Assembly (NCBI RefSeq): GCF_001194135.2
Contig: NC_069001.1
Coordinates: forward strand, 28,393,446 to 28,452,960
Origin: Octopus bimaculoides
Lineage: Eukaryota
Direction of reading: 5' to 3'
Length of the DNA: 59,515 nucleotides
The position numbers and the translations under genes are program-made. The notes under the pieces are model-generated. The model was not told where the DNA came from, searched no databases, and saw nothing but the letters and a program-made list of their open reading frames with translations. Below are positions 43 through 47,296 of the stretch, piece after piece. Numbering within the stretch: the first letter of the stretch is position 1; each line of letters begins with the position of its first letter.

Positions 43-1215
43 CACACGCGGGCACACACACATATACATATCTATACGTTTTTATATTGATACTTCCATT
101 CACTTCTTTATATATGTGTGTAGATCTAATAAGACTACATATTTGATAATGGATGGATGGATCCTTTCTATGTGTACATGTAGGTGTGTGCGAGGGAATT
201 CCACAATATAAATACACTTGAGTTCATTATATCTTACAATAGATTCTTATTAAAATAACATTTAACAGCATTTAGGTATGCTCAATGAAATATGCTTATA
301 ATGCCTTTGTTTCTTGTTTTTTTTTTCCTTTTCTTTATCTTTTGTTTGTTCTCTCACGACGCTTCCCGAATTTGAGTGATCATGCTATGAGTAAAAATGC
401 AGTAGATAAAAATTAAATAAATCTGACGTTATTTTAGAAGCTAAAGTAGATTTATCATTTCATAGCCCATTATATAAGAGAAACAAGCAAGGAAGGAAAG
501 CCTTAGAAAGTTACGCAAGAAAAATTTAATAGTTTATAAAACGGTATCGTAAATATTGAATACGATATTAATATGTTGAAACTAATGAATGGGCTCTCAG
601 ATATAATTGAAGGAGAAAATAACAGCTACATTCAATATGTAACTAACAGGAAATAGGATGATGCGATTCCGATGTGGAATAAAGAGGCGTATTAAAAGGA
701 AGAGTGAACCCTGGATTCAACTATTTTGTACGATTTTCGTTTCTTTACTTAATTATATTTTTTGTTGGTGGTGCTGATAGTGGTATGTAAAGTTATTCCT
801 GATCCTGAAAAATCTAAAATGAAATGATTTACAACCGTTTCTTCTTCTAATTATCGGCGTAGATATGCTCCTAACCGTATATAATCTAATGTATCCACCA
901 ACATTTATAAACGTTAGAATAATTCTGAGGGCAATTTTGCTCAGTATTTGAAACGATCAAGCAAGTGTGGCCCAGTTTGTCTAGAGTATTTGGGTTTTCT
1001 TTGCAAAGGAGAGATTAGAATTGTAATTTGGCACCAGGACATTTTGCTATTCATATTAACTCTGTACTTAACGAATCTAGATATATATAAATAATGATAT
1101 ATTTATTTATTTATTTATTTATGTGTTTCAGCCAAGTGGCTGCGGTCATGCTGGTGCACCACCGTGATTTTCACGTTCCTTGCATGGCTCTTGTCCCCCA
1201 CCTGACATGGTCCAA

Positions 1216-1525
1216 TCAAGAGTTTTGATGGCACATTTGGTGTATAAGAGAATTTGACACAGCTGCCCTAAACTGCGTCTCATTACGAGCCATTGGTTCG
1301 TCTGGTATCTTGGAGAGGAAAGCGTCAAGTTTTGTCTTGAAGACCTCCGCATCCATGTCTTGCATGTCTCTCAAATGTTTTGGCAGGGCATTGAAGAGCT
1401 GAGGTCCTCTGAAACCGAGGCTGCNNNNNNNNNNCTCCAGGGAGTAGAGACCTAGTGCCTTCAGTCGCTCCCTGTAGTTCATCTGTTGGACTGTGGCGAT
1501 CTTTGTTGTATAGTGCCGCTGAATT
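1216..1525 (-). pseudogene. LINE ORF2 C-terminal (post-RT) fragment
   Basis: IQRHYT...NYRERLKALGLYSLE...FRGPQLFNALP...FKTKLDAFLSKIPDEP...SNSLIHQ, the characteristic C-terminus of CR1-group ORF2. A 10-N gap of unknown true size lies inside. Confidence 0.85.
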
Positions 1526-1843
1526 GTATGTTGAGCATACAACTACATCAATTTGTTTTATGTGTACTATTAAAGTATCACATACAGAGTTTGAGTGTGA
1601 TAGTAGTAGTAGGGGTGTGACATCTTCTCGGATGTACATTGCAACTCCCCCATGACTTCTATCCCTTCTGTCTGTTCGGAGTACGGCATACTCTGGTATA
1701 TTTATCTCCGCATCTGCTATATTAGGTGTTAGATGCGTTTCGGTAAGCACCATGCATATTGCTAGGTCTTTCAGGTATTGGAACTTGTCTTTGCCGCCTG
1801 TTCGTAATAGGCCCCGGATATTCAGTAGGAATATGGGTGTGAT
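1526..1843 (-). pseudogene. LINE ORF2 AP-endonuclease N-terminal fragment
   Basis: Translation LLNIRGL...LTETHL...INIPEYAVLRTDRRDRSHGGVAMYI matches APE motifs (N-x-x-G-L, ETxL, RxDR, GGVA-x-Y) typical of CR1/L2/jockey-group ORF2. Confidence 0.85.
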
Positions 1844-2782
1844 ATCTGTGCAGGGGTTCCTGGTGTTAGCGGTGGCCATCCCTGATCCATCATCTGTGGT
1901 GGTCTTGGACAAAGGTTCGTGTGGCGTTGACTCTGTACCTTCTGCATCCACGTTAACTGTTGTACNNNNNNNNNNNNNNNNNNNNNNNNNNNNNNNNNNN
2001 NNNNNNNNNNNNNNNNNNNNNNNNNNNNNNNNNNNNNNNNNNNNNNNNNNNNNNNNNNNNNNNNNNNNNNNNNNNNNNNNNNNNNNNNNNNNNNNNNNNN
2101 NNNNNNNNNNNNNNNNNNNNNNNNNNNNNNNNNNNNNNNNNNNNNNNNNNNNNNNNNNNNNNNNNNNNNNNNNNNNNNNNNNNNNNNNNNNNNNNNNNNN
2201 NNNNNNNNNNNNNNNNNNNNNNNNNNNNNNNNNNNNNNNNNNNNNNNNNNNNNNNNNNNNNNNNNNNNNNNNNNNNNNNNNNNNNNNNNNNNNNNNNNNN
2301 NNNNNNNNNNNNNNNNNNNNNNNNNNNNNNNNNNNNNNNNNNNNNNNNNNNNNNNNNNNNNNNNNNNNNNNNNNNNNNNNNNNNNNNNNNNNNNNNNNNN
2401 NNNNNNNNNNNNNNNNNNNNNNNNNNNNNNNNNNNNNNNNNNNNNNNNNNNNNNNNNNNNNNNNNNNNNNNNNNNNNNNNNNNNNNNNNNNNNNNNNNNN
2501 NNNNNNNNNNNNNNNNNNNNNNNNNNNNNNNNNNNNNNNNNNNNNNNNNNNNNNNNNNNNNNNNNNNNNNNNNNNNNNNNNNNNNNNNNNNNNNNNNNNN
2601 NNNNNNNNNNNNNNNNNATGCAATAAAACGATCCCAGTAACTATTCGTGATTTGTTATAAACTGGGGAAAACGAAGTAGATATTTCAGATATATAAAAAT
2701 AATAATAGATGAGTGTCTGTGTTCGTATTTAACGACTAATCTATCCCTTTCTCTATATGTGTATGTTAATGTGTGTGCGCGC

Positions 2783-3972: not shown

Positions 3973-4024
3973 AAAGCCTTGTGAGTGGATTTGGTAGACG
4001 GAAACTGAAAAGAAGCCCGTCGTA

Positions 4025-4062
<38 letters not shown>

Positions 4063-4275
4063 TGTGTGTATGTGTATATGTTTGTGTGTCTGTGTTTGTC
4101 CCCCAACATTGCTTGACAACCGATGCTGGTGTGTTTACCACCCCATAACTTAGCGGTTCGGAAAGAGAGACCGATATAATAAGTACTAGGCTTAAAATGA
4201 ATGTCCTGGGGTCGATTTCCTCGACCCATGCTCCAGCATGGCCACATTCAAATTACTGAAACAAGTAAAAGAATA
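3973..4275 (+). mobile_element. SINE-A, 5'-truncated
   Basis: Homologous to the copies at 6192-6632, 41241-41545 and 45117-45365. It has an internal (TA)/(TG) run and ends ...ctgaaacaagtaaaagaata. Confidence 0.85.
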
Positions 4276-6191: not shown

Positions 6192-6424
6192 CTTTTTGTT
6201 CCCTTTTATTCTTTTACTTGTTTCAGTCATTTTACTGTGGCAATGCTGGAGCACCGCCTTTAGTCGAGCGAATCGACCCCAGGACTTATTCTTTGTAAGC
6301 CTAGTACTTAATCTATCGGTCTCTTTTGCCGAACCATTAAGTTATGAGGACGTAAACACACCACCATCGTTTGTCAAGCGATGTTGGTGTAACAATTACA
6401 ACCATACAAACATATGCACACACA

Positions 6425-6475
<51 letters not shown>

Positions 6476-6632
6476 GACGGGCTTCTTTCAGTTTCTGTCC
6501 ACCTAATCCACTCATAAGGCTTTGATCGACCTGAGGCTATAGTAGAAGACACTTCTCAAGGTGCCACGCAGTGTGACTAAACCCGGAACCATGTGTTTCG
6601 TAATTAAGGTACTTACCACACATCCACTCCTA
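6192..6632 (-). mobile_element. SINE-A, near full length
   Basis: Minus strand: tRNA-like head with degenerate A/B boxes, CORE-like ccttgagaagtgtctt segment (ccttgggcaaatgtc in the 53939-54098 copy), internal (TA)n, and a 3' tail shared with the LINE at 1123-1160. Confidence 0.9.
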
Positions 6633-8369
6633 CGTCAATATGATGATTTTATTTACTTGCCACGAGGGCGAAGGATGAGGGGGACAATAGAAATCAAACA
6701 AAATGTGTTTTGCTTTTTCATATAATGACATTATTAAATAAGTGTATAAACAAGGAAAGATTAAGTATGCACGGTATACGATGTAAAGGAAGGGACATAT
6801 ACATTGTATACAATGGTAAAAATGTGAGAGGTGTTATAGAAATGTTGTCCCTTTGGTACAGGATGACCTTTAGGGACAATCGACGAAACCTACTGTCCAA
6901 TACATCTCTGAACATCAAGGACACGCGTCCTCTCCAGTTTCATTTCTCTGACTAATAAGTCTACACTTAGGGAGGTGCCATCCGCCCTCGCCATTTTCAC
7001 AAATTCAACCACATTTCCATAAATTCACTCGAGAGGGATTATTCATGCAGAGAAATGTAAGAATATTGACTAAGTTTTAAAGCTTATTGTCACTGAAACG
7101 GGCATGTCGTATAATGTTAAGGTGCGAAAGTGTCCGATGATTTATACAAGATATGAGGAAACTTTAGAAAATGCCTCAAATAAATTCAATTAAGAGAACA
7201 GTCACTTATATAGAAGCAATCAAGAAGAAATTAGATCGCTAAACAAAGTCGAATGAGTACGGAGAGAAACACCAACATTCGATTACGTGAGTCAGTGTTC
7301 TATATTCTGGGCTCTCAAACTTTCCTTACTTTGTTTCCTCCTGTCACGACAGACAGCTAGTGCTGTCTAATTTCAATTTGCTCCGTAACTTCGAAATATC
7401 GTGTAAGAATAGGACTAAGAAGGAAGCAATATCACGCATTTGGAATTCTTGTGTTTCTGCAAGAGTAGCCTCAGCGATTTACTTTTGTGATCGTTTTTTT
7501 TTGTCGATAAATTTTCGAAGTGTTTTCAATCAACCAAAACAAAATTTCCAGTTATGTAACATCCCAATTTACATAATCAGTCTTACGGATTTGGTTTCTG
7601 CACACCAAGCCAGAAAATAGATTCACATGTTTGAGCTTTCTGAGAACGAGAGTAATATAGAATTGCGTACTCACTTCCTAAGAACACAAATAAAATTTTG
7701 TAATACATACATAACCTAACCTTATTTTGCGAAAAAAATACTAAGGACTGAAACATCATAGCTGCTGTTAAATTACCTATATAACACTATTTTTTTCAGA
7801 AATCTGCATGGACATGTTATTACGTTGTTAGCTTAAAGGCAGATATTGTATCGCTGTGTCAAATGTGAGGTCTACATTATAAAGTCTTGAAAGTTACGTA
7901 AACATATACGCCGTGCAACAACTACCGACCATAAAAGCATAGCTCATTCATATATGATGCCGGTCTTGTACCACTAAAGATGTTCATATAACGACTTCTA
8001 CGCAACTGCATCCCTTTAGTATAAATCAATCCATGTAGCACGTATTCTGTATAACAGCAGCAGACAGAACAATACATCAGGAGACATGACAAAACGAGTC
8101 CCTAAAAGATGCAAAACCGATGTTGCATATCAACAAAATTTTAAGAATCAAAACTTGAACGAACCACAAATTTCAGTCGCTTCGGCGTTGCATGCAGTTA
8201 ACGACGTAGTATCAATTGGCACAACACTTTTGCATATGTATTTTAAATAATAATAATAATAATGATAATAATAATGATAATAAATATGATTATATATAAG
8301 GCATAATAATATTAGGAAATAATATGTTAGACGTAAAAGATTAATACTTTAAAACAGTGTTAAAAGCAG

Positions 8370-9539: not shown

Positions 9540-9688
9540 GACAGGCTTCTTTCAGTTTCTACCCACCAATTCCACTCACAAGTCTTTGGTGCACCTGAAG
9601 CCATAGCAGAAGACACCTGGCAAAGGTGTCATGCACTTAAATTTAGTGATGCGTTTGGTAAGCAAGATTCTTACCACACAGCCGCGTA
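9540..9688 (-). mobile_element. SINE-A 5' half only
   Basis: Aligns to the head half of 6192-6632 (ccactcacaag..., cttaccacacagcc). No 3' half is adjacent. Confidence 0.75.
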
Positions 9689-32884: not shown

Positions 32885-33202
32885 GCAAGAAGTTTGCTTC
32901 TCATTCACATGATTCAGAATTCAGTCCCACTACGTCGTACCCTGGGTACCACGAGTCTTCTATTATAGCCTCGGGGTAACCAAAACTTTGTGAGTGAATT
33001 TGCTAGATGAAAACTGAAAGATGTCCCTCTGTCGTATATAGTTCCATATATTCATACAAATATGTATATGCATATGTGCGTAAATTTGTGTGTGTGTGGT
33101 TCTGAGTTCAGCCCTACCGCGTGGCACTTCGGCTTCTGCTCTAACTTCGGACCGAAAAATCCGTTTGAGACGGAAAATGAACGAAGCTCATCGTGTACAT
33201 AA

Positions 33203-33242
<40 letters not shown>

Positions 33243-33640
33243 CAAATTGAATGTACAACTGAAGGAGCTACGAATAGTTTCATACTCTTATGGTATTTGG
33301 ATAGGCGTTTTTATGAAATACGTCATGTGTCTTAAAGCAATCTTTCACTATCTATTTGTGAGTTCTACTTGCATGTACATATGTATGTGTGCGCGCGCAT
33401 GCTTTGTGCGTGTGTGTATATGAGTCTGTCTATGCCACCTATCACCGCTTGAGAACCGGTTTTGGTTTCTTTGTGTCCTAATATTTTAGCGATTCGTTAA
33501 AAGAATTCGATAGAAGGAATGCAAGGCTTTAAACAGATATTAGTACTGGAGTCGTTTCTTTGGACTAAAGATTTTTCACATAAATGCCCCAGCATTGCCA
33601 TAGACTAATAACTCAAAGAAGTAAGAAGCGATAAACAAAA
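32885..33640 (+). mobile_element. SINE-A with expanded microsatellite and a second nested head
   Basis: Head at 32885-33050, second head fragment at about 33095-33200 inside the microsatellite, 3' half at about 33430-33640. Confidence 0.65.
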
Positions 33641-40400: not shown

Positions 40401-41240
40401 AGTGATATTTCTCTTTCAAACATAATCACCACGACTCTTTCACATCACAGCTTATAACTGGAAAAGAGATTTGCCTCAGTTTCACAGAAATGTGCGACCT
40501 TTTCTCCATCTGTAGCGGATGTATCATGGAACACATGATTAATGCATATGCAATTTTTCCACAGAATACATCAGATGTGTTTAACTGTAAAGTAATGTTC
40601 AAAAAGAAATGATGGAGCACATTGTATTAAATATAAGAACAGTAAATAATCTACGTAACCTGCGTCCAAAAGGTTACGTCAAACCAACTCACAAACATTC
40701 GATTGATCCTAGTGTTAACTATAAGACAATTCTATTATCGCATCTCGTCACCTCACATCTTGGCTAGCATGTTGGCCACGCTTTGAAAAAATAAAATGTA
40801 GCGCACTATAACATGTAGTTTCAGATATACAAAGAGTTGAAATGGTGATTGCTAGAAAGTCTTTCATCATAGATATCTATTCGATCAGAAATGATTTGCA
40901 CCAAATCAACATCAACAACAACAGGAATAAGCGTAGCAACAACAACAGCTGCAGATTACTTGTTCTGGCTATTCTAAGTGCAGGAGATATTTCTCATATG
41001 ATAAAAGCAATTAACAGTTGATTAGGTGGTAATTTTCAGGAAAGTTGTAAACATTCTCTTATTGAAGCACTCAAAGCCGAGCGAACTTATAAAAATAAAT
41101 AAACGACATCCAATTCAATCCGTTGCCGTATATTGCCATTGTATAGAAATTCTACAAAATCTACATTGCAGGCAATAGTTCCAATAAGAATGAATCCAAT
41201 ATTCAGCATCCGTTATATACAGTTATGTACATACAAATTC

Positions 41241-41471
41241 TTTTTATTCTTTTACTTGTTTCAGTCATTTGACTGCGGCAATGCTGGAGCACCGATTTTA
41301 GTTGAGCAAATCGAACCTAGGACTTATTCTGTGTAAGCTTAGTATTTATTCTATCCGTCTCTTTTGCCGAATCACTAAGTTACGGGGACATAAACACAGC
41401 AGCATCAGTTGTCATGCGATGTTAGGATGGGAACCCAGACACAAACATATACGCGCACACACATACATACG

Positions 41472-41545
<74 letters not shown>
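41241..41545 (-). mobile_element. SINE-A 3' half, ending in its internal (TA)n
   Basis: High similarity to 6205-6470; intact tail hairpin CAGTC-ATTT-GACTG at 41262-41275. Confidence 0.9.
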
Positions 41546-41551
<6 letters not shown>

Positions 41552-42497
41552 CATACAAACATATACATATGCACGCATGCATATGTACCGATGTGTCATA
41601 TAAGTTAGGGGTTGTCTAAGCTTGAATTTATAATATCAGTATATAACTACCCGTATGCTTCAAACAGCGTGACGTAGGTATTCTTTGTGGCATACCATTT
41701 ACAAAAGATCAAATACGTAAGCGATTGAGAAAAAACGTACATGAGTAGATATAAACGAGTGTCAACCCTCCAGGCGGTACCTTACTACTTTTGGCTGGAA
41801 CCTGTAGAAGTCTATTAAATAGCACAAAGTATACATCAGAGAATACAAGCATAACAGAGATTTACCAACAGTGAAAATGTTATTATTAATCGTCGGTTAC
41901 ACTGGTTAATATAGATTAGTAAGTTTGGCACAATGCCGCCCATTTAGCAAGACGGAATAAACGAGTTAATCGATGCTACTTATTTGTCTACAATGTCTTT
42001 TATAGAGCCGGGATGGCTGGAAGGGAAATTCGAGGCAACCAGTCGTAAATAATTACAGCGTAGCATTTAAATATTCTCTTAACCGAGTCTGCCAATCTGC
42101 CGGTTGCACATTGGTTAATATAAAGAGCAAGCAATTCTGTCTATAACGTTATAAGTATTATTATTTCTGAAAATCTGCTGCTACGAAATGTTTTCGTTGT
42201 AGAAATATAACTAACTTGATAGGTTTATGTACAAATTTATTTCATAAAGTGCTGCAAAGCAAAGATGACTTTATAGTCAAACTGATAGTATTCAGCAGCC
42301 TTTACTATCTATAACTATCGCATAAATATAGTCTTCCTACAGTGAAATGGAATGCAGTATCATGTTTTGCGTTATGGTACATGCATGTGTCATTCCAGAA
42401 CATGAATATGAGTGCGAAGATGAGATTTATTGCATGACGCACAAACAAATGCTGTTTCCCGTGGCGAATATAATTTTAATAGTTCATAATTATACAT

Positions 42498-45116: not shown

Positions 45117-45365
45117 GTAGGCTTGGCTGTATGGTAAGAAGCTTGTTTCCCAACCATATAGATCCGGGTTCAATCTCACTGTGTGGCATCTTGGTCTAGT
45201 GCCTTCTACTATAGCCTCAGGCCGCTCAAAGCCTTGCGAGTGGATTTGTTGGACGGAAACTGAGAGAAGACTGCCGTATATATATATTTGTTGATTATAT
45301 CTATGTGTCTGTGTGTCTATTACCCCCACTTGATAGCAGATCTTGGTGTCTTGTCGTCCCTGTAT
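45117..45365 (+). mobile_element. SINE-A, 3'-truncated
   Basis: tggctgtatggtaag head, gggttcaatctc B box, gagtggatttg...ggaaactga, short microsatellite, then the start of the 3' half. Confidence 0.8.
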
Positions 45366-45811: not shown

Positions 45812-47296
45812 TTATTTAATTATCGTTTGCAGCAATAAACTGTTGCCTTACTGAGGTACCGCCATTAGTGTTAAAGCGTATTTGGAATCTTTTGCCGTTC
45901 CTGTCTTCGGAATACAGCAGCAATTCTTAGCATTTCTTACCGTTTCACTGCATCTGCTTTGCGTCTTTAAATTTCGTCTATTAATGCCATGGGTATGATT
46001 CGAGTTGAGCTGTTAAATATGGGGCTTTGTTGCGATTAAAATTGAGAGCAGTAATTCAAGTGACTTAGATGGAAAATTTCTCATAGAAGCAACATGGTTT
46101 CGCTTTACCGTGTTCTGAAGTATCACGTTATGTAACTAGCCAATCACCACATTCATGTCCTTGTCACGCAGTAAATCTCAATCACGGGCTGCAATACGCT
46201 CTGGATTCTGATTACAAGCCGTCTCTTGGTACATATCGGTGTGTCTGTAACTGATCGGCATTCCACTGTATTCTCTTCATTAATCCCACTTTTATATCGC
46301 ATTCAAATATTTCTTTAATTAGATGTCTTTCCAGTTTTCTGGACTGTCTCCGGTACTTTTGTGCCAGCACAGTTGTTTACAGTGGCCGACTGTATGGCCG
46401 AACGCATATCTAAGGAAGTTACGTGAACAGAAGAGGATCCAAAGCATTTAACTGAGGAACTAAGTTAACTACGGGTAGTCTCGGTATGGATGGCTGTCTT
46501 CGTAGTGAGATGTCGATTAGCTGTCAGTGTCTGACTCCTATATCTTACAAAGTCATGTGGCCGCTCCTCTTCTGTACAAAGGATAACAAGGTCAGGCAGT
46601 TTGAGATATATCATGCTTTGATCAAGATACATCACACCCAGATTTGTAAACACACACACACACACGCATGCACACACACACATACACACTAGTCAATTTC
46701 TGCCACGACGTTTCCAACTAATCCCCTACCTCCGAACAAATTGGAAACGTTGGGACTCCTGTCGCAATAATAATAACGATGATAATAATAATAATAATAA
46801 CAACAACAACAACAATAATAATAATCGCTTCTACTAGACAATAATAATAGTAGTAAATATATTATTGCTGTTACTGTTGTCGCTATTATTATTATTATTA
46901 TTATTATTCTTATTATTATTATTATTTCCACTATTATTATTATTATTATTGTTGTTATGTTTATATACGATATTCAATACACGACTCCTTTTATATTTAC
47001 TTAGATTTGAGAATGCTTGACATTTATAGAAATACTCAGCATAGTGTGTTGAATGGATGTAAATGTTTGCGTGATCCACATGGCAAGAATGGAAAGCGAA
47101 ATCGATCATTGAACACGTTTGAACTCGAAACTTAATTAGTTGAAGTTAAATAATCTATTACATCACAGGAATGCTTCCAGCAAAATAATCCGTTCGGTAT
47201 TTGGTTAAATATCAACGACGACTCCTCCTTCTTCTTCTTCTTCTTCTTAATTTTTTTGCTTTTCTTCTTTTTCTTCGTATTATTATTATTATTATA

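What the first reader, a model, noticed from the sequence alone, without database searches (positions are those of the whole stretch)
1123..1160. LINE and SINE-A share a 3' stem-loop with a compensatory base-pair change
Seen: the LINE 3' end (+ strand GTTTCAGCCAAGTGGCTGCGGTCATGCTGGTGCACC) matches the SINE-A tail at 41259-41294 (GTTTCAGTCATTTGACTGCGGCAATGCTGGAGCACC) at 29 of 36 nt. The LINE hairpin is CAGCC-loop-GGCTG (1129-1142) and the SINE hairpin is CAGTC-loop-GACTG (41262-41275). One C-G pair has become T-A, and two further differences fall in the 4-nt loop. Established: CR1/L2-group 'stringent' LINEs recognise a 3' stem-loop that partner SINEs copy. Inference: this LINE family, or a close relative, is the mobilising partner of a very abundant SINE, and the covariation marks the RT recognition element. 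The tails differ ((TAAA)n versus AAAAG-type), so the actual partner may be a sister family.
Basis: partly seen in the sequence, partly recalled or inferred. Interest (0 to 1): 0.7.

Follow-up and report, generated by a model that had tools for sequence, protein, structure and literature searches.

The report
Shared LINE–SINE 3′ double-hairpin tail
A jumping-gene (LINE) fragment and an abundant octopus-type short repeat (SINE) end in the same ~60-base RNA module of two small hairpins plus a short tandem repeat, which is the expected handle by which the LINE's copying enzyme also copies the SINE; a clear new example of a well-known mechanism.

Summary
In detail: 29/36 identity.

The element is larger than described. 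On the sense (minus) strand it is two adjacent hairpins:
- HP1: 3-4 bp, a 1x1 mismatch, 4 bp, and an NCCA tetraloop.
- Then GAAAC and a microsatellite.

All seven differences in the 36-mer are structure-neutral. Four independent LINE 3' ends fetched from other assemblies carry the same module directly after the ORF2 stop. At family level three pairs covary and the loops are hypervariable. Each sequence folds alone into this structure; the antisense strand does not.

Sister LINEs, including a copy in Octopus vulgaris, carry the SINE's tail unit (TAAAAGAA; two copies in L001 and L005). The window copy is dead: it is internally deleted, with an endonuclease start fused to the ORF2 C-terminus.

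Full-length relatives have endonuclease, reverse transcriptase and this C-terminal domain. CR1/L2 clade placement and RT recognition remain inferences.

I found no published octopus SINE/LINE pair in the papers searched. This is a new member of a known kind, of moderate interest.

The parts
1101..1122 (-). LINE 3' microsatellite tail, (AAAU)5 in RNA sense; the insertion ends here
   Evidence: Read directly. The tail differs from the SINE-A tail. The same (TAAA)n type is seen in the distant LINE L007.
1123..1128 (-). Conserved single-stranded spacer, AAAC plus 2 variable nt, between HP2 and the tail
   Evidence: AAAC follows HP2 in all five family-level sequences, and the next nucleotides vary.
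1129..1142 (-).
   Evidence: MFE fold, RNAalifold, pair counts. Pair 4 is C-G in 5 LINE copies and U-A in 6 SINE copies.
1143..1164 (-). HP1, new here: CGGU-G-GUGC-ACCA-GCAU-G-ACCG. It has 4 bp, a 1x1 G/G mismatch, 4 bp including a conserved G.U, and an NCCA tetraloop.
   Evidence: MFE -20.6 kcal/mol, z = -4.0. Covarying pairs: U-A vs C-G, and a closing pair C-G vs U-A.
1165..1215 (-). Remaining LINE 3' UTR between the stop codon and HP1; not shared with the SINE
   Evidence: ORF end at 1216. blastn similarity to the SINE stops at 1160.
1216..1542 (-). LINE ORF2 C-terminal domain, interrupted by the 10-N assembly gap at 1425-1434, which hides about 50 codons
   Evidence: BLASTP to P0026 residues 828-973, E = 3e-29. 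tblastn. 73% identity to P0001.
1526..1965 (-). LINE ORF2 N-terminal part (start of the AP-endonuclease domain) fused directly to the C-terminal domain. This is an internal deletion of about residues 109-827, including the RT. It runs into the 652-N gap at 1966-2617.
   Evidence: 63% identity to P0026 residues 1-108, E = 4e-42. P0026 has Exo_endo_phos and RVT_1. P0023 continues '...TYRPPDAP' where the window copy jumps.
41238..41301 (-). SINE-A copy 1, 3' module: HP1 (41276-41297, outer arm decayed), HP2 CAGUC-AAAU-GACUG (41262-41275), GAAACAAG, and a (UAAAAGAA)2-type tail
   Evidence: CM hit at 71.8 bits. Sequence.
41230..41460 (-). SINE-A copy 1, body plus tail up to the internal (TA)n(TG)n microsatellite; no head recognisable upstream
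   Evidence: blastn and alignment A6.
6195..6640 (-). SINE-A copy 2, the most complete: head, internal (TA)n(TG)n microsatellite, body, and 3' module at 6209-6263
   Evidence: CM hit at 75 bits. Head and alignment.
3973..4275 (+). SINE-A copy 3, 5'-truncated in the head; 3' module at 4219-4273 with a decayed HP2
   Evidence: CM hit at 59.2 bits. Alignment A6.
45815..46143 (-). Second, older LINE 3' end of the same family: ORF2 C-terminal remnant at 45994-46143, decayed HP1/HP2 at 45815-45868, and a (UAAW)n tail
   Evidence: tblastn to P0003 and P0026. CM hit E = 0.04. Sequence and alignment.
20192..20557 (-). Old SINE-A-like copy: head at 20489-20557, decayed tail module at 20192-20238
   Evidence: CM hit E = 0.008. 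Head blastn. Sequence.
32955..33635 (+). Old SINE-A-like copy: head at 32955-33039, decayed tail at 33575-33635

Best explanation
The last ~60 nt of this LINE family's transcript and of SINE-A's transcript form the same RNA module. It consists of two hairpins that abut in the LINEs (in the SINE consensus one unpaired nt separates them), a conserved single-stranded GAAAC, and a short tandem-repeat tail.
- HP1: 3-4 bp, a 1x1 mismatch, 4 bp, an NCCA tetraloop.
- HP2: a 5-6 bp stem with a free loop.

The LINE is an endonuclease plus reverse-transcriptase element with a CR1/L2-like C-terminal domain. Its ORF2 protein most likely binds this module on its own RNA and starts target-primed reverse transcription on the repeat tail. 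SINE-A carries a copy of the module, so it is reverse-transcribed and inserted by the same enzyme.

The window's LINE copy is a dead, internally deleted member with an (AAAU)n tail. The working partner of SINE-A is more likely the sister family whose tail is built from the same UAAAAGAA unit as SINE-A's.

Shown here: the homology, the structure and its covariation, the LINE's identity, and the sister families with the SINE's tail. Inferred: protein binding, priming on the tail, and trans-mobilisation.
For: Homology:
- 29/36 exact region and a 51-nt blastn match.
- A covariance model finds the module in 4 window copies and 7 copies in fetched loci at 55-75 bits.

The box is the LINE's own 3' end:
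- It starts immediately after the ORF2 stop in L001 and L005.
- In L004 it starts about 50 nt after the ORF2 stop. L003 (O. vulgaris chromosome OX597824) also carries it, inside the called reading frame of a degraded copy.

Structure:
- Each of 7 sequences folds alone into HP1 plus HP2 as its MFE. z-scores are -2.3 to -4.3 for six of them and -0.6 for L007.
- RNAalifold predicts the same structure.
- 89% of cells are paired, against 20-41% when partners are slid.
- The covariation score is 0.24 against 0.14 in shuffles; 0/500 shuffles reach it.

Family-level covariation:
- Every variable column of the core is either a loop or mismatch position, or one of three covarying pairs.
- The three pairs vary U-A/C-G, C-G/U-A/G.U and C-G/U-A.
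- The chance that 6 variable paired columns fall into exactly 3 pairs is 0.0012.
- Random substitution gives the observed LINE-versus-SINE pattern with P = 0.003.

Other structural support:
- HP2 loops differ in sequence and length (ACUU, AUAU, ACU, GUAAACUA with one extra pair, AAAU, UAAU).
- A conserved G.U pair and much poorer, inconsistent antisense folds point to the sense RNA.
- Distant LINEs L007 and L010 (about 50% amino-acid identity) keep the architecture: 3 bp, a mismatch, 5 bp, a CCCA loop, then a second hairpin. Between them each hairpin has one compensatory change.

Tail:
- (UAAAAGAA)2 occurs in SINE-A, L001 and L005, and once in L003.

LINE identity:
- 23,473 library relatives of the C-terminal domain, many about 980 aa with the match at the C-terminus.
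- Five of them have Exo_endo_phos plus RVT_1.
- L007's upstream ORF is RVT_1.

Known mechanism: stringent 3'-end recognition, stem-loops and template slippage on repeats (PMC3747384); the CR1 hairpin plus 8-bp microsatellite as a putative RT recognition site (PMC8665684 and PMC4316615).
Against: - No functional data exist.
- No sampled LINE has the SINE's U-A pair in HP2, so the exact partner is unsampled, or the change arose in the SINE master copy.
- The SINE consensus lacks the HP1 closing pair (A x A).
- The LINE sequences are single genomic or metagenomic copies, not family consensuses. L001, L004 and L005 come from an unidentified assembly (GCA_024449705.1) and from metagenomes of unknown host.
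- The SINE consensus rests on only 6 copies.
- There are only three covarying pairs, each perhaps a single event.
- More distant relatives (L008, L009, L011, L012, L013) have unrelated 3' UTRs, so the module is confined to a sub-lineage.
Confidence: 0.75

Rival explanations
1. Shared descent only. SINE-A once captured a LINE 3' end, but the hairpins are not a recognition element. The similarity and apparent pairing reflect recent common ancestry and chance.
For: Only three covarying pairs, each possibly a single event. Related sequences can beat column shuffles without any structure, a caveat stated in the output. Decayed copies break pairs freely.
Against: All variable core columns are loop positions or paired-and-compensated positions. 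Loop length and sequence vary while the stems are kept. The architecture persists at about 50% protein identity with fresh compensatory changes. The fold is strand-specific.
Confidence: 0.1
2. The module is functional RNA structure, but serves another step, such as transcript 3'-end stability or processing, nuclear export, or RNP assembly with ORF1p or a host factor, rather than direct ORF2p/RT recognition.
For: Nothing here identifies the binding protein. The sequence-conserved NCCA tetraloop and GAAAC could be protein or host-factor sites.
Against: The position at the extreme 3' end, immediately before the repeat tail, matches LINEs where the 3' UTR was shown to be needed for reverse transcription (UnaL2 and others; PMC3747384). 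The SINE retains exactly this part and nothing else of the LINE.
Confidence: 0.12
3. The 36-nt match is a SINE-A fragment that landed next to an unrelated LINE.
For: SINE-A-related copies are frequent in the window: at least 7 in about 56 kb.
Against: The box sits after the ORF2 stop in independent LINE copies from other sources. The window LINE's box shares diagnostic states with the L004 LINE (the U-A pair, GACC) and not with any SINE copy, and it ends in its own (AAAU)5 tail. A second, old LINE copy in the window also carries the box.
Confidence: 0.01

Closest known systems
Eel UnaL2 LINE / UnaSINE1 pair (L2 clade; stringent 3'-end recognition)
   Same: The LINE and a CORE-type SINE share a short 3' tail containing a conserved stem-loop followed by a short tandem repeat ((TGTAA)n there). 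The stem-loop and repeats are needed for retrotransposition, with template slippage on the repeats (as summarised in PMC3747384).
   Different: There is no sequence or Rfam-model similarity: no Rfam family matched at E <= 10. Here there are two abutting hairpins with an NCCA tetraloop and an internal 1x1 mismatch. The repeats are 8-mers (UAAAAGAA) or 4-mers (AAAU). Function is untested.
Amniote CR1 LINE 3' end (hairpin plus 8-bp microsatellite ATTCTRTG) and its SINE partners
   Same: A hairpin immediately upstream of a 2-4 copy octamer microsatellite, proposed as the RT recognition site (PMC8665684 and PMC4316615). The ORF2 has EN, RT and a C-terminal domain. Copies are typically heavily 5'-truncated, as L003 is here.
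   Different: The hairpin and octamer sequences differ. The window copy uses a tetramer. Clade membership by RT phylogeny was not tested. The host is a cephalopod.
Octopus tRNA-derived SINEs OK, OR1 and OR2 (Ohshima and Okada 1994), one of which is a CORE-SINE
   Same: Same host group and very high copy number. From my memory of the CORE consensus, SINE-A's head (…CACCTTGAGAAGTGTCTTCTACTATAGCCTCAG…) looks like a CORE domain. This is a lead only.
   Different: I could not retrieve those sequences, so identity with SINE-A is untested. The 2013 table of SINE/LINE pairs lists no octopus pair. Recent octopus repeat papers list most SINEs as unclassified and do not discuss tails or partners.
RTE-2_OV, the LINE highlighted as active in the octopus brain (PMC9115989)
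   Same: A LINE in the same genomes and a candidate driver of retroelement activity.
   Different: It belongs to a different clade (RTE). Nothing in that paper's text links it to SINE tails. The SINE-A tail matches the CR1-like family studied here instead.

Membership tests
Stringent-type LINE/SINE pair with a common 3' tail (Ohshima-Okada model) | The SINE 3' end is homologous to the 3' end of a LINE in the same genome | tested here: met
   51-nt match in the window. CM hits at 55-75 bits in both element types. A LINE copy carrying the SINE-type tail unit lies in the O. vulgaris chromosome locus L003, which also holds SINE-A copies.
Stringent-type LINE/SINE pair with a common 3' tail (Ohshima-Okada model) | The autonomous partner encodes endonuclease and reverse transcriptase | tested here: met
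   Full-length relatives (P0026 and others) have Exo_endo_phos plus RVT_1. The window fragments match P0026 residues 1-108 and 828-973. The window copy itself lacks the RT.
Stringent-type LINE/SINE pair with a common 3' tail (Ohshima-Okada model) | A conserved 3' stem-loop supported by compensatory changes, and a non-poly(A) repeat tail | tested here: met
   Tails are (AAAU)5 and (UAAAAGAA)2.
Stringent-type LINE/SINE pair with a common 3' tail (Ohshima-Okada model) | The 3' UTR is required for retrotransposition, and the SINE is mobilised in trans | not testable with these tools
   Needs a retrotransposition assay.
CR1/L2 group of LINEs | Placement of the RT domain inside the CR1 or L2 clade in a phylogeny with reference elements | not tested
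   No reference set was available. Pfam gives only generic RVT_1 and EEP. The C-terminal motif (…YWERL..L.LYSLERRRERY…FN.LP…FK..LD…) resembles CR1/L2 ORF2 ends from my own knowledge only.
CR1/L2 group of LINEs | 3' hairpin followed by a short microsatellite (an octamer in CR1) | tested here: met
   An octamer repeated twice in L001, L005 and SINE-A; a tetramer repeated five times in the window LINE. Compared with the description in PMC8665684.
Rfam curated RNA families (including the LINE 3' elements held there) | Score at or above a family's gathering threshold | tested here: not met
   No gathering-level hit in the whole window. Only chance-level hits at E <= 10 on 1050-1300.
tRNA-derived SINE | 5' head recognisably derived from a tRNA, with pol III A and B boxes | tested here: inconclusive
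   ARAGORN finds no tRNA in the window. Rfam gives no hit at E <= 1 on the head at 6470-6760. A GGTTCCGGGTTTAGTC box-B-like motif is visible by eye.

The most novel reading that the evidence does not exclude
A previously undescribed two-hairpin, NCCA-tetraloop 3' module defines a lineage of CR1-like LINEs of marine invertebrates. This lineage, rather than the RTE elements highlighted so far, would be the engine of the octopus-specific SINE expansion (SINEs are about 11.6% of the O. vulgaris genome per PMC13282606). That would make the expansion experimentally testable with stem and compensatory mutants.
Probability: 0.4. Interest if true: 0.55.

Novelty: new member of a known kind. Interest (0 to 1): 0.4.

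Why it matters
SINEs are the largest transposon class in Octopus genomes. They are about 40% of TE content (PMC8967140) and 11.6% of the O. vulgaris genome, mostly 'unclassified' (PMC13282606). None of the papers I could search names the LINE that mobilises them.

A defined 60-nt module with covariation support gives three things:
- a concrete partner candidate (a CR1-like family with a (UAAAAGAA)n tail);
- a diagnostic for classifying octopus SINEs by tail;
- a compact RNA target for binding and retrotransposition assays.

Conceptually it adds nothing beyond the established 'common tail' model.

Tried and rejected
- Pfam on the window's own ORF pieces and on P0003, P0007 and P0023 gave nothing. 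A PDB sequence search with P0023 gave nothing. The LINE's identity had to come from full-length relatives instead.
- DNA-pattern scans for the module found only one chance phage hit in IMG/VR (L002), and nothing in JGI metagenomes or GTDB genomes.
- Protein-guided scans of JGI metagenomes gave one distant LINE with an unrelated 3' UTR (L013). The same scans of GTDB genomes and IMG/VR gave nothing.
- P0006 could not be located. L006 is a chimeric or bacterial-looking contig downstream of the ORF.
- The distant LINEs L008, L009, L011 and L012 lack the module.
- The species of GCA_024449705.1 and the hosts of the ENA samples could not be identified from the literature.
- Ohshima 1996 and Albertin 2015 are not held.
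- Rfam and ARAGORN do not recognise a tRNA in the SINE head.

Full report
**1. Observation**

The window is a gap-rich scaffold with 16 runs of N. Its repeats match Octopus sequences. The LINE 36-mer lies at 1125-1160 and the SINE 36-mer at 41258-41293. The hairpin coordinates (1129-1142 and 41262-41275) are exact.

I counted 7 mismatches, so 29/36 is right. One stem pair is C-G in the LINE and T-A in the SINE, and two differences lie in the 4-nt loop, as stated. No shuffle of the window contains either 36-mer. blastn extends the similarity to 51 nt at 78% identity. Both elements are on the minus strand, so all RNA-sense statements below refer to the reverse complement.

**2. What the two elements are**

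*The LINE*
- Minus-strand ORF 1216-1542 is an ORF2 C-terminal domain. It aligns to residues 828-973 of P0026, and the 10-N gap hides about 50 codons.
- Directly upstream (1526-1965, minus strand) is the first ~108 residues of the same protein type, at 63% identity and E = 4e-42.
- P0026 and four other ~1000-aa relatives have Exo_endo_phos, RVT_1 and this C-terminal domain.
- In L007 the ORF just upstream of the homologous domain is RVT_1.
- The window copy is therefore an internally deleted, dead LINE lacking roughly residues 109-827.
- A profile of the C-terminal domain finds 23,473 representative proteins, so this is a large LINE group.
- A second, older 3' end of the family lies at 45815-46143 on the minus strand.

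*SINE-A*
- It has three good copies in the window, at 41230-41460 (-), 6195-6640 (-) and 3973-4275 (+). Several decayed copies are also present.
It has a ~165-nt head, an internal (TA)n(TG)n microsatellite, a ~215-nt body, and the tail.

**3. The shared element is the LINE's own 3' end**

Homologues of the C-terminal domain led to independent LINE copies:
- L001, from NCBI assembly GCA_024449705.1;
- L003, on an Octopus vulgaris chromosome;
- L004 and L005, from ENA metagenome contigs.

In L001 and L005 the box begins 1-2 nt after the ORF2 stop codon. In L004 it lies about 50 nt after the stop, and in the window LINE 51 nt after. This excludes the 'SINE fragment next to a LINE' scenario.

**4. 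Structure**

Read as RNA, the box is two hairpins that abut in the LINEs:
- HP1 is [N]GG[Y]-G-GUGC-NCCA-GCAU-G-[R]CC[N]. That is 3-4 bp, a 1x1 mismatch, 4 bp with a conserved G.U, and an NCCA tetraloop.
- HP2 is CAG[Y]C-loop-G[R]CUG.
- GAAAC, 2-3 variable nt and a microsatellite follow.

Evidence for the fold:
- Each of seven sequences folds alone into exactly this MFE structure.

| Sequence | MFE (kcal/mol) | z-score |
|---|---|---|
| Window LINE | -20.6 | -4.0 |
| L001 | -24.7 | -4.3 |
| SINE consensus | -17.8 | -3.6 |

- RNAalifold on 11 copies predicts the same structure.
- On that alignment 89.4% of cells pair, against 20-41% when partners are slid by 1-3 columns.
- The covariation score is 0.24 against 0.14 in shuffles, and 0/500 shuffles reach it.
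- The antisense strand folds worse and inconsistently. Together with the conserved G.U, this points to the sense RNA.

Family-level covariation, using four LINEs plus the SINE consensus:
- Every variable column in the core is one of three things. It is a tetraloop position, a mismatch position, or a member of one of three covarying pairs.
- The HP1 Y-R pair is U-A in the window LINE and L004, and C-G in L001, L005 and the SINE.
- The HP1 closing pair is C-G, U-A, U-A and G.U in the four LINEs.
- The HP2 pair is C-G in all LINEs and U-A in all six SINE copies.
- The chance that six variable paired columns fall into exactly three pairs is 0.0012.
- Random substitution reproduces the LINE-versus-SINE pattern (at most 1 broken pair, at least 2 compensated) with P = 0.003.

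- two form the HP2 pair;
- two lie in the HP2 loop;
- one is the tetraloop N;
- one is half of the HP1 Y-R pair, whose partner is at 1161, outside the 36-mer;
- one is the mismatch position.

HP2 loops differ in sequence and length (ACUU, AUAU, ACU, an 8-nt loop with one added pair, AAAU, UAAU).

Two distant LINEs from marine metagenomes, L007 and L010 (about 50% amino-acid identity), keep the architecture. They read ACGGUGUAC-CCCA-GUACAACGU and GCGGUGUAC-CCCA-GUACAACGC, followed by UGAC/GUCA and UGGC/GCCA. Between the two, each hairpin has one compensatory change. More distant relatives (L008, L009, L011, L012, L013) have other 3' UTRs.

**5. Tails and the likely partner**

| Element | Tail after GAAAC (RNA sense) |
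|---|---|
| SINE-A | AAG(UAAAAGAA)2 |
| L001 | (UAAAAGAA)2 |
| L005 | (UAAAAGAA)2 |
| L003 (O. vulgaris LINE copy) | one UAAAAGAA unit |
| L004 | UUAAAGAA-UUAAAAAAA… |
| Both window LINE copies | (AAAU)n type |

These tails are read.

By tail and by the HP1 Y-R pair, SINE-A groups with the L001/L005/L003 type, not with the window LINE. No sampled LINE has the SINE's U-A pair in HP2. The true master partner is therefore either unsampled, or the change arose in the SINE.

**6. Mechanism**

Established knowledge, taken from the papers read:
- 'Stringent' LINEs need their 3' UTR.
- Stem-loops with compensatory changes are typical of stringent LINE and SINE 3' ends.
- Repeat tails support template slippage (PMC3747384).
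- CR1 elements carry a hairpin plus an 8-bp microsatellite, thought to be the RT recognition site (PMC8665684 and PMC4316615).

Inference for this case: ORF2p binds HP1/HP2 and primes on the repeat tail, and SINE-A RNA is copied in trans because it carries the same module.

**7. Comparison and novelty**

- No Rfam family matches.
- The 2013 compilation of SINE/LINE pairs contains no octopus entry.
- The octopus repeat papers I could read do not discuss SINE tails or partners. They list most SINE families as unclassified.
- Repbase and Dfam could not be consulted, so prior description there cannot be excluded.

The principle is textbook. The instance, and the two-hairpin NCCA architecture, appear to be a new member of a known kind.

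**8. Caveats**

- The LINE sequences are single copies, not consensuses, and three come from sources whose species I could not identify.
- The SINE consensus rests on six copies.
- Clade assignment (CR1 versus L2 and others) rests on architecture and on motifs recalled from memory, not on a phylogeny.
- Function is untested.

Noticed in passing
window 1526-1965 joined to 1216-1542 (minus strand): The LINE copy is an internal-deletion derivative. The start of the endonuclease domain (P0026 residues 1-108) is fused directly to the ORF2 C-terminal domain (from about residue 828), so the whole RT is missing. I did not resolve whether this is a one-off deletion, an assembly join, or a propagating non-autonomous subfamily.
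   Followed up: partly
window 6385-6475, 41440-41560, 4028-4075; also 1-40 and 59400-59515: SINE-A carries an internal (TA)n(TG)n microsatellite between its head and body. Its length differs greatly between copies. Many of the window's (TA)n tracts may be SINE-borne.
   Followed up: partly
window 6470-6640 (minus strand); other head copies at 53937-54094(-), 45117-45281(+), 9540-9635(-), 20489-20557(-), 32955-33039(+): The SINE-A head (…GTGGTAAGTACC…GGTTCCGGGTTTAGTC…CACCTTGAGAAGTGTCTTCTACTATAGCCTCAG…) is not called a tRNA by ARAGORN or Rfam. From memory it resembles a CORE-SINE domain, so SINE-A may be the published octopus CORE-SINE (OR1 or OR2). Heads outnumber tails in the window, which suggests truncated or rearranged copies, or other SINEs sharing the head.
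   Followed up: partly
window 45815-46143 (minus strand): A second, older LINE 3' end of the same family. Its HP1 inner stem reads GUAC…GUAA, an A-U pair where the others have G-C, as in the distant L007/L010 group. It may be decay or an older variant of the stem.
   Followed up: partly
L003 2950-3004 (minus strand; O. vulgaris SINE copy): One O. vulgaris SINE copy has double changes that keep HP1 pairs (C-G to U-A next to the tetraloop; G-C to C-G in the outer stem). This hints at a distinct source-gene subfamily with its own compensated stem.
   Followed up: no
L012 650-680: A distant LINE (46% amino-acid identity) has a 7-bp hairpin, CCAGUCA-UUA-UGACUGG. Its core is identical to SINE-A's HP2 stem (CAGUC/GACUG), but it sits in a different position in a longer 3' UTR. 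It could be coincidence or a relic of module shuffling.
   Followed up: no
P0006: A 94-aa fragment of this LINE's ORF2 is deposited as a 'hypothetical protein, partial [Escherichia coli]'. This is almost certainly cephalopod DNA contaminating a bacterial assembly.
   Followed up: no
window gaps at 1425-1434, 1966-2617 and 14 others: There are 16 runs of N, 2949 nt in total. The 10-N gap inside the LINE ORF hides about 150 nt, judging by the alignment to P0026. The 10-N gaps are therefore placeholders of unknown size.
   Followed up: yes
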